DNA of 64,000 nt from Laetmonice hystrix (taxonomy: Eukaryota), in the NCBI GenBank assembly GCA_965235115.1, contig OZ249447.1:5146001-5210000 (forward strand). Reading direction: 5' to 3'. The notes beneath the pieces are model-generated. The model did not search any database. It had not been told where the DNA came from and was given only the letters and a program-made list of their open reading frames with translations. The position numbers and the translations under genes were made by a program. The stretch's first letter is position 1. Every line of letters starts with the position of its first letter. Shown in pieces: positions 18,129 through 26,885 of the stretch.

Positions 18129-18683
18129 TGTCCGCAGCCATCTAGGAACTCTTACATGTCAATTTTATTTTATTTTTAGTCTTTTTTAAAGCATTACGTA
18201 CTCGTATATCATACAAAGATGCAATAATCACGGGAACTTATACTTTTGGATACCATGTCCCCACACAGGTATTCTTTGTAATACCCACTGCATTTATCAT
18301 TTCTTCTACAGATTTCTTCTCAAACTGCACTACTGAAGTGCTTATTTCTGTTAGCAAAACGTGCATTAAAAAATCACAATGCCGACTGAGCGACATCAAA
18401 TTTATGACACTACCCATAACTGTGCTGTCATTTATCCGCAGCAGAATACAGACATATAGTGTATTCATATGTTGTGCGTACGAGCAGATGTAGGTAGTTA
18501 AAGGCCACACCGAATTACTAGTTGTCACCCATCCTGGCCAACTTACCTGACAAACGTTAAAAACACCTGTCCCCGATCTGTCACCCCTTCGTGTCCAGGC
18601 GTGCCCGTTTCCATAGGAATTCGTGCCAAAGTGCCCCCCCCCCCCCTCCCTCCTCACGGGGCCCTGACGGGGGCCTGACTTAC

Positions 18684-18963
18684 CGGTCTCCGAGTAGGTA
18701 CTACCCTCCTCCGAGTACTGGCTCCCGGAGCGGGCCCGGCGCCCACTGCCGCTTCCCCCGCCTCCGCCCTCCTCGCTGCCGCTGGCCGAATACCCCGAGC
18801 CTGACCTCTTTCGGCGGAGCTGCTGGATCCTCCTCTCCCGCGGTTTCTCGTCCTTGGTGAATGCCTTCTCGCGGTATTCGATCTCCGTCTTCTGGACGGC
18901 GTCATCCATGGTGACATGCTTGACCGACTTGACACCCTTGTCGTCATCAATATACTGGATGTC
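18684..18963 (-). CDS. 280-nt coding exon (phase 0-1): DIQYIDDDKGVKSVKHVTMDDAVQKTEIEYREKAFTKDEKPRERRIQQLRRKRSGSGYSASGSEEGGGGGSGSGRRARSGSQYSEEGSTYSET-G; charged then Ser/Gly-rich, protein unidentified
   Basis: GC-rich, codon-like composition; acceptor cctacag|GAC; consensus donor ACCG|GTAAGT; lies inside ORF 18238..19113. Confidence 0.8.
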
Positions 18964-19527
18964 CTGTAGGCTAGGAGTGGCGTTATTACTCGTGTGTACA
19001 GCCATGACGATTGGTGTGTGTGTGTGTCTGCTGCAAACCTTTGCGGACTGCGCACGACCTTCAGCCGGCCCTGGAGGTCTCAGCTCCGTGTGGCGTCTGC
19101 CTGGCACAGCCAATCGCTCGCACTTGTTTCAGTCGAGCTGCTGGACACGCACCAAGATATCTGTCAACACTTGACGGAGTTGTCACTTCTTTTAGAGATG
19201 TCTGAGGTGGGAGAAGGTGGGATACCGAACTGGTGGGAGCGTTATAGAGGACAGAGCTCTCATTCCCTGCTGTGCTACGTACGTCTCTATGTCCTCAGTG
19301 GTGAACTATCTGTACACCGTCAGATCGGTTCACCACTAGAGGCCTGCAAGTCTTGCGCCTCACCCAGCGGGGGATGCTACTCCCGCCACCGCTACCGCTG
19401 CCGCCCGTTCCTCACGCTAAGGTGCCCCGTGAAGGTTCCGTGGGAGAAAATCAGGTCGGTTAAGGTGAGCTAATACACCTGCTCTACTGACCTCCGGGTG
19501 GACAACATGAACCCCCTACCTGACTGA

Positions 19528-22466: not shown

Positions 22467-24036
22467 CCTTTACCATCAAGGCTAGCCCACAGACAGAGCC
22501 GCTGATTAAAATATTCTGAACGCACCTTCAAAGATACTCAAAAAGGGTCGGCTCTGGCAGTAATTGACAATGTTGGTTGTCCTTAGTTAAAGAATGCACT
22601 TCATTACTTGGAATTAGACTTTAATCAGGCGACTGGGAAATGGCAAACGACAGGCACTCTGGTGCAAGAACGGTCTTCGCCGTTTTTCTTAACGAAAGGC
22701 TCCTTGCTATAATCAAAGCAACATTTAGTCGGGTCCCTTCAAAGTTTTAAACATAATCAATTTATCCATTTTAGCTCCTTCCCACCAGTGTAATCTAACT
22801 ATGTCTTTGTATTATCTAGTTTATTATGTTTCATCATGTCATTCAGAATTGGGTATGGTGCTTACCATGGAAGAAAGTCATCACTACAATATCTAATCTG
22901 GTGTTATCAAGGTATAAACTGGGTCATCACGACCTTGGACAATGTCGAGCCAAGTACATAGAGCAGGCCAAGATAATCATCCTCTGCTGCTCATCCAATT
23001 ACAAACACCAGGGAGGAACCATTTCCCCTCATATTCTGCACCCCCATGCAGGGTAAAACCCTCAACCCCTTCCATCGCCGCCCATTACCTTTGATGTGGC
23101 CCGGGAACCAGAGGCGAGGGAGCGCTGGGGTTAACTAGACTGTATTATAACAGGCCATGCCCCATGTGGGGCCCAACACTGGGCCCCACCTCTACCAGTC
23201 GTCCCTATCTCGGAGGTTTCATCATATCACCCTTTAATGAACCGTTTTAACTTAGTCAAAATACTCCGAGTCGGAGAGCGCCAACATATATACATCCAAG
23301 CAACAGTCGGGTCACACGGAAGGACGCGTGTTATCAGTATCCCATCCCGACAGGGCCGAATATACCAATACGACGCTTTGTCTGTGTCCTTTGACTGTCT
23401 CTCTCCTCATACTCTCCGCCATTGATCTCCGCCACGCCCAACCAGCACCGTATGGCCACTAGGTATGAAATATACATATGTACATCCGACTGCTTCCTAA
23501 TACAGCCAATGGCACAGGGAGCTTAGCTATGGCTCAGCTTCTCATAGTCGGCGCTGGTCACCGCCTAGAGGGGGTTTCCCCTGGATATTCTACCCCCACG
23601 AAATAGGGAACAGAGGTTAGGGGCAAGGGCAGGGCTAAGGGCCGGGGAGAAGGATAGGGATGGGGGGGGGGGGGGGGGTACGGGTTAGGTGTACTAAGGG
23701 TCTTGTTCAGAGTTTGTATTATTGACTGATTATTTTGTTCTCCCTACTGCCCTATGATCCGAACAGTGCGCCACCTCGTGGATAGAATGGAACTACTTTG
23801 GCCCAAACCACCGCACGTGGCGACGAGTTAGTACCACTACCAGTACAGTAACTGATGAACTCGCGAGTCAATACTGAACCGATATATCATGAAATAAATT
23901 AAAACATCTCTTAGATTGCAGGCTCAGAATGGCATGAACACTCTGTGCTCTCTCTTGACGTTTGAGACAGGCGCCTTGGTGACGAAGTGTAAGATTGAAT
24001 GACCTCACTCACTGATACGTACGACACGAGGACACG

Positions 24037-24466
24037 ACTGTGTGCGCCATCCTGAGACATGCCATCAAAAACACAGCTAACAGTGCCACCTAGCGGGCTC
24101 CATGGTACTATCTCTCACCACACTGTGTGCGCCATCCTGAGACATGTCATCAAAAACACAGCTAACAGTGCCACCTAGCGGGCTCCATGGTACTATCTCT
24201 TACCACACTGTGTGCGCCATCCTGAGACATGCCATCAATAATACAGCTAATGGTGCCACCTAGCGGGCTCCATGGTACTATCTCTTACCACACTGTGTGC
24301 GCCATCCTGAGACATGCCATCAATAATACAGCTAATGGTGCCACCTAGCGGGCTCCATGGTACTATCTCTTACCACACTGTGTGCGCCATCCTGAGACAT
24401 GCCATCAATAATACAGCTAATGGTGCCACCTAGCGGGCTCCATGGTACTATCTCTCACCACACTGT
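24037..24466. repeat. Minisatellite, 85-bp unit, 5 copies, each carrying a CTCF-like motif
   Basis: actgtgtgcg at 24037, 24122, 24207, 24292, 24377; each unit contains gtgccacctagcgg. Confidence 0.95.
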
Positions 24467-25329
24467 ATTGTTGAATATTGTGGAAAGCATTTATTTTTCG
24501 GCGAGCATCGCACGCGTCAACATGAGCGTACAAATCCTAAAAAGATTCTCGTCAAAAGAATTTGTTCTAACTAAATAATTACATCAGCAAACAAACATAA
24601 CAAACAAAAACAACAACAAACACGTGAGCCCTGACATGATATTGTCGGTGTGCCTTAGCTTTAACTTCAACACCTTTGTAAAGTCATAATGGCATGTCTG
24701 AGACAGTCGACCAAACCAAAGACAGGGGCTGACACTGCTCGCCACCTAGTGTCAAACGGCGCAGTTGTTCATGAGTTCTGGTACTAGTGTGTCTACTACC
24801 CACCAGGGGTCAGTGCCGAGCTGGTCACGAGAAGTCGGTATGACCAATGTGACTGGTTTATCTTACAGGTAGGAGGATCCTCAAAGGTTTTATATTCAAC
24901 CTTTACCATCCTATACAGATTAAGATGGAATAACAAAATGAAGAGCTGCCTGGCTTTGCTGAATCAGGTGTGTACCGCTGGCTGGCTGCGCATAAAAGAA
25001 TTCAGACACGATTTTTCATCCGACTGGGGGGAAAAACCGGTGAACCGGTAAATCAGGCCCTTCATACTTTTTGATCTATCTGAGCAGTACTGTCTGATAT
25101 ACAGTTCCGACGTCTGTGCTACCATGTGCTCCCACCTTCACGGCCACACCCTCTGGTGGAGGCTTCTCAACCACCATGCAATCACCCAGCACCTCCTTCC
25201 TCGTTCAATGGAAGTCCATAGGGGTCGGGCGGGGTGGGGGCTGGGGGCAAACGAGTCATGTACTCATTCCACAGACGGACACAGAACGGGACTGAACGGT
25301 TGTAACGAAAATAAACGGCCGTGAATGCT

Positions 25330-25420
25330 TGTGTTTGTGAGACCCGCCTTGAAGCGCCACCTGCCGCCATTTCCACGAACTGCGTACGTCACGCCGTCTT
25401 TTCCACTTTGAACATGACAA
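25330..25420 (-). promoter_or_regulatory. Candidate housekeeping-type promoter/5' end (YY1 + CRE-like)
   Basis: The minus strand reads gcgTGACGTAcgcagttcgtggAAATGGCGGC, a CRE/ATF-like site followed by the YY1 core AAATGGCG; CpG-rich. Confidence 0.35.
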
Positions 25421-25513
25421 TAGGTGCCATACTACACACTGTATACACATTGTATTGGACAAACTGTTACAGTTCTCACTGTGCTAGGGGCGCTAAGTGC
25501 ATTCACTCGCACT

Positions 25514-25658
25514 GACCGACCCAGGACTGACATTACCGACCCAGGACTGACATTACCGACCCAGGACTGACATTACCGACCCAGGACTGACATTACCGAC
25601 CCAGGACTGAGATTACTGACCCAGGACTGAGATTACCGACCCAGGACTGAGATTACCA
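25514..25658. repeat. Minisatellite, 20-bp unit, ~7 copies
   Basis: accgacccaggactga(c/g)att repeated. Confidence 0.95.
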
Positions 25659-26885
25659 CCGGAAACTTGAATAAGGTTGATTCCGGAAAACCTGGCTGAC
25701 TCTCTCTTAGATTAGTTGCCGATACCGTCGCTAGGTGGCTACAATATAAGGATCGGTATTGGGCAGAAATCTGCTTGTGGTCGGAAGGCAATCTCCTAGC
25801 ACAAGGCTTTCGCTTCCTGTCTTGTCTTGCCAGCTGCAATGGGATATATGTGTGGCGGGGGCCCGGCGTGTTGATTCCAAGTTCTGCGCCCCCTCCCTTC
25901 ACTTCTGTCCTCAGGTGGCCAGACTGCTGTTCCATTGGTACAATCTGCCACTACAGCCGTTGTCGCCGCCCATCTCACCGTCAGCTGTGAATCCTCATTT
26001 CTGTCACTTAACACGTTCAAACTGGAGGTCGGCGAGACCTGACTACAACCGCCCGCAACATAACCCCTCCGTCACTGGTATCATACGGTATATCACCGTC
26101 CAACGACAGACCGACCAGCCTCACAATATACCTCTCAAGTACTGCACAGTGTATCGAAACCAGGTGTGAAAGCAATGGAGATCTGTCGGACCTAGATTCC
26201 CTGGTTATGCAGGTCCTAGGTAATCAACTTAGTGGTATAAGACAATATAATTAAGAAAATACAAATGGATTTAGGTTAAGATTAGGATTAGGGATAGGAT
26301 TCTGAAGAAATATTTCCGATTTTTTATTTTGAAATTTCCTCAAAAAACGCCAAATCCGCTTATATAGGCGCACGCCTAAAAGTGTGTCAATACGGTACCT
26401 AAATCATACCTGATACAAATTGGTATAGGCACGCACTGGCCCCGTCACTTTCGCCTCTTTGCCAACTCTGTCCTACAGAATCCCCCCCCCCCCCTCCGTC
26501 CTCGGGCCCAGACACAAAGAGATTAGGTACCCCCCCCCCTCCAGTCCACTGTCCAGCAAATAATCCCTGGTTCAACCAACTATGGAAGCTGGTCTTAACA
26601 TACGCCGGTGTTACCATGGTAGCAGCATGCGCTCAACGTGTCTATGATTGAATGAAAACAAACCACCGTCAGAACTCGCTTCATTTTTACCTTGATACCA
26701 AACAAAGTGGTGTGTTCTATGGCAGATAGGAATTTTCACAGAGCTGTGACCATGTCCCTGAACGTAAGCGAAGCATTAAATCGGCAGAACTAGAGATGTG
26801 TGTAAAGTCGACTTCTAGAATTACATTCGGATCCTCTATGGTTTGCCTGACACAAGGATCGGCGTGGTTCAATGTTTGCTTGCCA

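What the first reader, a model, noticed from the sequence alone, without database searches (positions are those of the whole stretch)
23768..25741. Co-oriented CTCF-motif cluster, five sites amplified by an 85-bp tandem repeat
Seen: eight CTCF-like motifs on the same strand within 1.6 kb (23768, five array copies from 24084, ~24740, ~25354) plus one opposite-strand motif (~25728). Similar matches are sparse elsewhere (56085, ~59415). Established: CTCF (core CCASYAGRKGGCRS) exists in most bilaterians, and clustered oriented sites mark strong insulators or boundaries. Inference: a pre-existing boundary whose site number is being tuned by a VNTR, a copy-number-variable insulator inside or between genes.
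Basis: partly seen in the sequence, partly recalled or inferred. Interest (0 to 1): 0.7.

Follow-up and report, generated by a model that had tools for sequence, protein, structure and literature searches.

The report
CTCF-motif cluster with one site tandemly amplified
A 2.2-kb stretch of gene-poor DNA holds an unusually dense group of binding motifs for the chromatin-organising protein CTCF, five of them copied by an ordinary 85-base tandem repeat; the group is real and probably bound, but it is one of many in this genome and nothing shows that the repeat "tunes" it.

Summary
An 85-bp x 5.1 minisatellite (24037-24466, 97% alike) carries one CTCF-type core per unit. At least four more independent sites lie within 23766-25921.

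A CTCF matrix gives 5 independent hits there, against 0.04 for shuffled matrices. The genome encodes a CTCF orthologue.

The motif is 50-58 times over-represented genome-wide. The CCG form used by the array is as common as the vertebrate CCA form, so the array units are perfect matches to this species' motif.

- Co-orientation vanishes once tandem copies are collapsed (5 minus, 2 plus).
- Minisatellites cover 22-39% of local DNA and capture cores at the chance rate (1 of 136 arrays, 0.54 expected).
- Thousands of same-strand tandem motif pairs exist elsewhere, so the amplification looks like a neutral by-product.
- Copy-number variation, binding and insulation could not be tested: only the assembly's own short-read contigs were available.
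- No recognisable exon lies in the window. A Wnt exon and a Bap31 exon lie about 130-140 kb to the right.

The scan had already noted CTCF-type clusters and CTCF-like minisatellites elsewhere in this genome.

Verdict: a new member of a known kind, of moderate interest.

The parts
23766..23784 (-). CTCF-type site, unique sequence (CCACGAGGTGGCGC, 1 mismatch to the consensus)
   Evidence: Matrix score 16.8, p about 1e-6; IUPAC match with 1 mismatch
24037..24466 (.). 85-bp minisatellite, 5.1 copies, 97% alike, with two unit subtypes (copies 1-2 and copies 3-5)
   Evidence: Tandem Repeats Finder; only this locus matches in the genome
24081..24099 (-). Array copy 1 of the CTCF-type site (CCGCTAGGTGGCAC)
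   Evidence: Score 15.6; perfect match to CCRSYAGRKGGCRS
24166..24184 (-). Array copy 2 of the site
24251..24269 (-). Array copy 3 of the site
24336..24354 (-). Array copy 4 of the site
24421..24439 (-). Array copy 5 of the site
24737..24755 (-). CTCF-type site, unique sequence, perfect 11-nt core CACTAGGTGGC
   Evidence: Score 14.3; core match
24797..24815 (+).
   Evidence: Score 16.9; 1 mismatch
25144..25162 (-). Weak CTCF-like match
   Evidence: Score 11.8, p about 2e-5
25352..25370 (-). CTCF-type site with perfect 11-nt core CGGCAGGTGGC and a weak 5' flank
   Evidence: Core match; 1 mismatch to CCRSYAGRKGGCRS; matrix score only 10.4
25729..25739 (+). Perfect 11-nt core CGCTAGGTGGC on the plus strand, with flanks that do not fit
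   Evidence: Core match; below p<1e-4 with the vertebrate matrix
25903..25921 (-).
   Evidence: Score 13.5, p about 8e-6
25515..25657 (.). Unrelated 20-bp x 7.2 minisatellite lying between the sites; it holds no motif
   Evidence: Tandem Repeats Finder; no hits inside it

Best explanation
This is a genuine cluster of CTCF-type binding motifs: seven independent places, eleven instances counting the tandem copies, in about 2.2 kb of single-copy, exon-free DNA. It is one of many such clusters in this genome.

The genome's CTCF orthologue, whose fingers 3-7 are close to the human ones, most likely occupies several of these sites. The stretch would then be an architectural element, a strong CTCF platform that could hinder cohesin or bridge to other CTCF clusters.

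The 85-bp array is best read as a by-product of this genome's pervasive minisatellite formation. Replication slippage or unequal exchange duplicated a unit that happened to contain one site, recently (97% identity, two unit subtypes). This raised the local site number from about 7 to 11.

Shown: the motif cluster, its non-randomness, the independence of the sites, the CTCF gene, the genome-wide selection of the motif including the CCG form, and the neutral capture rate.

Inferred: occupancy by CTCF, any insulating effect, and any variation in copy number.
For: - Cluster. 5 independent matrix hits in 23.7-25.95 kb, against 0.04 for 300 column-shuffled matrices. 8 of the window's 9 exact cores lie in 1.65 kb. 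The IUPAC scan gives 9 matches against 0.97 expected.
- Independent origin of the sites. Flanks are unlike and there are no decayed units beside the array. The region is single-copy in the 627-Mb genome.
- CTCF is present. Exons on G000:C7:17.407-17.410 Mb are colinear with human CTCF residues 310-371 and 372-416. The best single stretches score 149 and 74 bits; for the second exon the best stretch of any other zinc-finger protein scores 39 bits.
- The motif is a selected word. The perfect 14-mer occurs 8,872 times against 154 for the reversed control. The CCG form occurs 8,861 times against 158. Up to 1 mismatch gives 51,810 against 5,833. The 11-nt core gives 54,241 against 4,911. The local flanks hold 14 independent hits per 200 kb against 2.8.
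- The array is a by-product. Arrays cover 39% of the window and 22% of the flanks. 1 of 136 arrays holds a core, with 0.54 expected. Same-strand pairs 57-87 bp apart number 3,781 against 72 for the control, the same roughly 50-fold ratio as for single sites.
- Literature. Fingers 3-7 read the 15-bp core and are the conserved part of CTCF across bilaterians (PMC7021899).
Against: - There are no binding, accessibility or contact data for this species. The only public runs that hold the locus are three DNA runs of one sample.
- No site outside the array is a perfect 14-mer, while perfect sites with scores of 20-24 exist in the flanks. These may be weaker sites.
- In echinoderms and flies CTCF motifs explain boundaries poorly (PMC13317027).
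- No exon was found within 64 kb, so it is unclear what would be insulated from what.
- The neutrality argument rests on one array among 136 and on copy-weighted genome counts.
Confidence: 0.55

Rival explanations
1. This is a pre-existing domain boundary whose strength is adaptively tuned by copy-number variation of the 85-bp array, that is, a selected, copy-number-variable insulator with co-oriented sites acting as in vertebrates.
For: The cluster is real. The array units are perfect species-type motifs. High unit identity implies recent change in copy number. CTCF-bound tandem arrays that act as boundaries are known in mammals (DXZ4, PMC5899087; the tRNA VNTR at 1q23.3, PMC4041453).
Against: The orientation bias disappears when tandem copies are collapsed (5 against 2). 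Arrays capture cores at the chance rate, and arrays are everywhere. No length polymorphism was seen; the one 270-bp joint in a short-read contig can be explained by unit variants plus a small deletion beside the array. There is no orientation rule in the non-vertebrates studied (PMC13317027), and an earlier follow-up on this genome reached the same view (s1-334686).
Confidence: 0.1
2. The motifs are real words of this genome but are not used here. They would be unbound look-alikes or relics, for example remains of an old site cluster, or sites read by another of the genome's many C2H2 zinc-finger proteins, with no architectural role.
For: All unique sites deviate from the full 14-mer. There is no CpG island or other mark of an active element. 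The locus lies in a minisatellite-dense, exon-free stretch. The genome holds large zinc-finger gene expansions on C8 and C19. Heterozygous differences avoid the cores, but only about 1.2 hits were expected, so there is no evidence of constraint.
Against: One-mismatch and core-only matches are about 8 times over-represented genome-wide, so most are not chance. Four or more independent sites in 1.65 kb has a Poisson probability of about 1e-5 at the genome's own density of one core per 11.6 kb. Clustering of sites is a general property of this genome.
Confidence: 0.28
3. Chance. The region's composition simply produces CTCF-like strings, and the tandem repeat multiplies one of them.
For: Five of the nine to eleven instances are copies of one event. 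The finding was picked after the fact.
Against: 0 of 300 column-shuffled matrices give even 3 independent hits here. 0 of 100 dinucleotide shuffles reach the observed counts. The reversed core gives 0 hits in the window.
Confidence: 0.03

Closest known systems
Clustered-CTCF domain boundaries of vertebrates (for example the boundaries dissected in PMC9279147 and PMC11344162)
   Same: Several CTCF motifs lie within a few kb of non-coding DNA. There is a divergent pair (24737 minus, 24797 plus) inside a mostly one-directional group. The cluster sits in a gene-poor interval about 140 kb from a developmental gene (a Wnt exon).
   Different: No binding, cohesin or contact data exist here. The orientation bias is not significant. 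The organism is a non-vertebrate, earlier notes say lophotrochozoan, where loop extrusion stopped by oriented CTCF has not been shown (PMC10658181, PMC13317027). The species' motif accepts G as often as A at position 3.
CTCF-binding tandem repeats of mammals: DXZ4, FIRRE, ICCE and the 1q23.3 tRNA VNTR (PMC6985041, PMC5899087, PMC4041453)
   Same: Head-to-tail repeat units each carry one CTCF motif in one orientation, so copy number sets the number of sites.
   Different: Those are kb-scale units in tens to hundreds of copies, with shown CTCF binding and shown polymorphism. This is an 85-bp unit in five copies, with neither shown. It sits in a genome where a fifth to two fifths of the local DNA is minisatellite.
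Other CTCF-type motif clusters and CTCF-motif minisatellites in this same genome (earlier notes s1-334686, s1-334697, s1-337698, s1-330612, s1-347195)
   Same: The motif, the clustering and the tandem amplification are the same. Examples are the 73-bp array at C1:46455098 with CCGCTAGGTGGCG in each unit and the 64-66-bp array at C2:16097152.
   Different: This locus combines a short array with several unique sites. Many of the others are long pure arrays.
Transposon-borne CTCF sites (rodent SINE B2 type; recalled from general knowledge)
   Same: A copying process multiplies a CTCF motif.
   Different: Here the copying is local and tandem. The unit and its flanks occur once in the genome.

Membership tests
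CTCF binding site (motif level) | Sequence fits the CTCF core consensus or matrix well above background | tested here: met
   The array units are perfect for CCRSYAGRKGGCRS. The unique sites have 1-2 mismatches or a perfect 11-nt core.
CTCF binding site (motif level) | The organism encodes CTCF with the DNA-reading fingers 3-7 | tested here: met
   Exons at G000:C7:17.407-17.410 Mb are colinear with human CTCF 310-416.
CTCF binding site (motif level) | The motif is over-represented in the genome, showing that it is a used word | tested here: met
   8,872 against 154; 8,861 against 158; 54,241 against 4,911.
CTCF binding site (motif level) | Occupancy by CTCF in vivo or in vitro | not testable with these tools
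   Only three DNA runs of one sample hold the locus.
Clustered-CTCF boundary or insulator | Several sites within a few kb | tested here: met
   Seven independent places in 2.2 kb.
Clustered-CTCF boundary or insulator | Orientation pattern: co-oriented or divergent sites beyond chance | tested here: inconclusive
   5 minus against 2 plus once the array is counted once. One divergent pair lies at 24737/24797.
Clustered-CTCF boundary or insulator | Drop in contacts across the site, cohesin retention, enhancer blocking | not testable with these tools
   No Hi-C, ChIP or reporter data could be reached.
Clustered-CTCF boundary or insulator | Lies between differently regulated genes | tested here: inconclusive
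   No Pfam-recognisable frame of 75 aa or more in the window. CN_hydrolase exons lie about 217 kb to the left, Bap31 about 128 kb and a Wnt exon about 142 kb to the right. Only half of the flanks was sampled.
VNTR (copy-number-variable minisatellite) | Head-to-tail copies of a 10-100-bp unit | tested here: met
   Period 85, 5.1 copies, 97%.
VNTR (copy-number-variable minisatellite) | Different copy numbers among individuals or haplotypes | tested here: inconclusive
   The short-read contigs of one sample cannot span 430 bp. One 270-bp joint is not a multiple of 85 and fits unit variants plus a deletion at 24467-24481.
CTCF-bound macrosatellite (DXZ4/FIRRE type) | kb-scale unit, tens to hundreds of copies, each with a bound CTCF site | tested here: not met
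   85-bp unit, five copies; binding is unknown.
Transposon-borne CTCF sites | The unit is a dispersed multi-copy element | tested here: not met
   Only the locus itself matches in 627 Mb.

The most novel reading that the evidence does not exclude
In this genome, minisatellite formation would be a systematic generator of multi-site CTCF platforms. On the order of a hundred arrays carry one perfect CTCF-type motif per unit, so site number at many architectural elements would vary between individuals. Half of all sites use a CpG-containing form (CCG at positions 1-3), read perhaps through a fly-like finger 7. This could make them switchable by DNA methylation. The present locus would be a young example, where an array is growing inside an older cluster of unique sites.
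Probability: 0.15. Interest if true: 0.65.

Novelty: new member of a known kind. Interest (0 to 1): 0.35.

Why it matters
How CTCF works outside vertebrates and flies is an open question, and spiralians have almost no data. This locus adds little by itself.

The checks made for it give a usable picture for one spiralian-type genome:
- a conserved CTCF;
- a motif over-represented 50-58 times;
- a species-specific tolerance of G at position 3;
- frequent site clusters, and many minisatellites that are arrays of sites.

Dense clusters such as this one, with eleven instances in 2.2 kb, are natural first targets for ChIP, ATAC and contact-map tests of whether CTCF insulates in this lineage. The short array gives a natural allelic series, if it proves to be polymorphic.

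Tried and rejected
- Transposon or dispersed repeat as the source of the sites: rejected. The unit and both flanks are single-copy.
- Decayed extra units beside the array: rejected. No local alignment rises above shuffles except a marginal 15-mer at about 23497.
- RNA gene in the unit: rejected. No Rfam family, no tRNA, and the unit folds no better than shuffles (z 0.6).
- CpG island or promoter: none, with CpG observed/expected at 0.5-0.8 as in the surroundings.
- Coding exons: ten long ORFs and then 104 frames of 75 aa or more in the window gave no Pfam family.
- Expression and polymorphism from public reads: only three DNA runs of one sample, kept as short contigs. There was no RNA and no second individual.
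Background therefore rests on 264 kb plus whole-genome pattern counts.
- The organism's phylum was not tested here. The Atlas look-up of the Wnt exon only confirmed the family.
- Heger et al. 2012 could not be read.
Full report
**What is there**

The window is C13:5,146,001-5,210,000 of a 627-Mb assembly in 35 contigs. Tandem Repeats Finder reports an 85-bp unit repeated 5.1 times at 24037-24466, with 97% matches. Reading the sequence shows two unit subtypes, copies 1-2 and copies 3-5, so there were at least two rounds of duplication.

Each unit contains GTGCCACCTAGCGG on the plus strand, that is CCGCTAGGTGGCAC on the minus strand.

**Is the motif cluster more than chance?**

Three scans agree.

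At p<1e-5 it gives 23766(-), the five array copies(-), 24737(-), 24797(+) and 25903(-) inside the finding. Only 15188, 56086 and 59415 score elsewhere in the window.
- *Matrix control.* Counting identical tandem copies once leaves 5 independent hits in 2.2 kb. 300 column-shuffled versions of the matrix give a mean of 0.04, and none gives even 3.
- *Exact core.* With the 11-nt core CRSYAGRKGGC, 8 of the window's 9 matches lie in 24085-25739: five array copies, 24741(-), 25356(-) and 25729(+). The reversed core gives none.

It missed 24797(+) and 25903(-). Its sites at ~25354 and ~25728 have perfect cores but poor flanks.

**Are the sites independent?**

The sequences around the sites are unlike each other. 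No decayed copy of the unit lies beside the array. The unit and both flanks match only themselves in the genome. The cluster is thus neither a transposon nor a decayed longer array.

The unit holds no Rfam family, no tRNA and no unusual RNA fold. There is no CpG island.

**Does the species have CTCF, and is this its motif?**

This was well above some 160 other zinc-finger hits.

The exons in that locus are colinear with human CTCF:

| Exon in L024 | Human CTCF residues | Best single stretch |
|---|---|---|
| first | 310-371 | 149 bits |
| next | 372-416 | 74 bits |

For the second exon, the best single stretch of any other PDB zinc-finger protein scores 39 bits. A third exon matches fingers 7-9. 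The genome therefore encodes a CTCF orthologue with conserved fingers 3-7. These are the fingers that read the 15-bp core (PMC7021899).

Whole-genome pattern counts, each with the pattern read backwards as control, show that the motif is a strongly selected word:

| Pattern | Matches | Reversed control |
|---|---|---|
| Perfect CCASYAGRKGGCRS | 8,872 | 154 |
| Same, up to one mismatch | 51,810 | 5,833 |
| 11-nt core CRSYAGRKGGC | 54,241 | 4,911 |
| CCGSYAGRKGGCRS (G at position 3) | 8,861 | 158 |

The last row was unexpected: the form with G at position 3 is as common as the vertebrate form. The array's CCGCTAGGTGGCAC, a one-mismatch site by the vertebrate consensus, is therefore a perfect match to this genome's own motif.

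By my reading, the recognition helix of finger 7 resembles the fly's more than the human's. This may relate to the position-3 difference. That comparison rests on my memory of the fly sequence and was not tested.

**How special is the locus?**

In 200 kb of sampled flanks the matrix finds 14 independent hits, against 2.8 for shuffled matrices. Some are very strong (scores 20-24) and several come in pairs a few hundred bases apart. Clustering is therefore a general habit of this genome, as an earlier follow-up also concluded (s1-334686).

At the genome's density of one core per 11.6 kb, four independent cores in 1.65 kb has a Poisson probability of about 1e-5. The cluster is dense, but it need not be unique.

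**Is the array 'tuning' the site number?**

- Minisatellites with period 10 or more cover 39% of the window (37 arrays) and 22% of the flanks (99 arrays in 200 kb).
- Of these 136 arrays, one holds a core: this one. If array units sampled ordinary DNA, 0.54 would be expected.
- Genome-wide, same-strand motif pairs 57-87 bp apart number 3,781, against 72 for the control. That is the same roughly 50-fold ratio as for single sites.
- The listing shows about a dozen such loci on C1 alone. At least eight of them are true minisatellites with one perfect motif per unit, for example C1:46455098 (73 bp) and C1:69002354 (83 bp).

Arrays thus seem to amplify whatever they contain, and sites are neither favoured nor avoided.

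The five cores are identical. With only about eight variable positions in the unit, this is expected by chance.

Co-orientation of tandem copies is automatic. Among independent sites the count is 5 minus to 2 plus.

**Copy-number variation**

Only three DNA runs from one sample and one study hold the locus, and they are kept as short contigs. Laid on the region, they show about 30 heterozygous differences in 1.9 kb. None falls in a motif core, but about 1.2 were expected, so this says nothing about constraint.

Small indels lie beside the array. One contig skips 270 bases, which is not a multiple of 85. Unit variants plus a deletion at 24467-24481 can explain it. Whether the array is a VNTR remains open.

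**Surroundings**

- No frame of 75 aa or more in the window matches a Pfam family.
- In the sampled flanks there are carbon-nitrogen hydrolase exons about 217 kb to the left (L004).
- A Bap31 exon lies about 128 kb to the right (L018:7771-8118).
- A Wnt C-terminal exon lies about 142 kb to the right (L019:2480-2983, minus strand).

The cluster therefore lies in a long, exon-poor, minisatellite-rich interval next to a developmental gene. That is a plausible but unproven place for an architectural element.

**Mechanism and comparison**

The most likely reading (0.55) is a CTCF-occupied platform made of several independent sites, one of which was recently multiplied by neutral slippage.

Whether it insulates is unknown. 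Sea urchins and sea stars show only weak motif enrichment at boundaries and no orientation rule (PMC13317027). A squid shows enrichment at domain borders, and direct evidence in spiralians is lacking (PMC10658181).

The nearest known things are vertebrate clustered-CTCF boundaries (PMC9279147) and CTCF-bound tandem repeats such as DXZ4 (PMC5899087, PMC6985041) or the 1q23.3 tRNA VNTR (PMC4041453). This locus differs from them in unit size, in copy number, and in having no evidence of binding or polymorphism.

**Verdict**

This is a new member of a known kind, of moderate interest. The phylum of the organism was not tested here; earlier notes call it lophotrochozoan or annelid-like.

Noticed in passing
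whole genome (G000): The over-represented CTCF-type motif of this genome takes G as often as A at position 3: CCGSYAGRKGGCRS 8,861 times and CCASYAGRKGGCRS 8,872 times, with controls of 158 and 154. The G form creates a CpG inside the core.
   Followed up: partly
G000:C1 and C2, e.g. C1:16473950-16475179, C1:46455098-46455620, C1:69002354-69002780, C2:3950958-3952125, C2:16097152-16099409: Many minisatellites (units of 25-83 bp) carry one perfect CTCF-type motif per unit. There are 3,781 same-strand pairs 57-87 bp apart, against 72 for the reversed control.
   Followed up: partly
window 26026-26400: Contig depth in the assembly's own sample rises from about 45 to as much as 81,000. This marks a very high-copy repeat just right of the cluster. 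It includes degenerate TTAGG-like repeats at about 26265-26300.
   Followed up: no
window 23658-23681 and 26482-26501 / 26527-26547: A poly-G run and two poly-C runs lie in inverted orientation, sharing GGGGGGTAC / GTACCCCCC, and bracket the cluster at a distance of about 2.8 kb. They may be chance low-complexity sequence or the ends of an old element.
   Followed up: no
window 1-64000 and L004-L023: Minisatellite load is extreme: 37 arrays cover 39% of the window and 99 arrays cover 22% of the 200 kb of sampled flanks. That is about one array every 2 kb.
   Followed up: yes
L013:5616-5764 and 8737 (C13:5.1316-5.1347 Mb); L011:6744 and 7100: A group of plus-strand CTCF-type sites lies about 38 kb left of the minus-strand cluster, a convergent arrangement under the vertebrate model. 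A pair of very strong minus-strand sites (scores 21.9 and 23.7, 356 bp apart) lies about 78 kb to the left.
   Followed up: no
L024 = G000:C7:17406599-17409724: CTCF orthologue. Exons for fingers 1-9 are visible in open frames at L024 717-980, 1435-1626, 1771-1925 and 2464-2709.
   Followed up: partly
G000:C8:24.4-28.8 Mb and C19:12.09-12.13 Mb: There are very large tandem expansions of C2H2 zinc-finger genes. Most of the 163 hits to a two-finger query fall there.
   Followed up: no
L019:2480-2983 (-), L018:7771-8118 (+), L004:6958-7791 (+): A Wnt C-terminal exon (Wnt7-like by my recollection, not tested), a Bap31 coiled-coil exon and carbon-nitrogen hydrolase exons are the nearest recognisable genes to the window.
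   Followed up: partly
window 18241-19128 (-): This is the longest open frame outside repeats (296 aa as a stop-to-stop frame; 291 aa from the first start codon). It lies in a GC-rich patch and has a Ser/Gly/Arg-rich tail. It matches no Pfam family and could be an unrecognised exon.
   Followed up: partly
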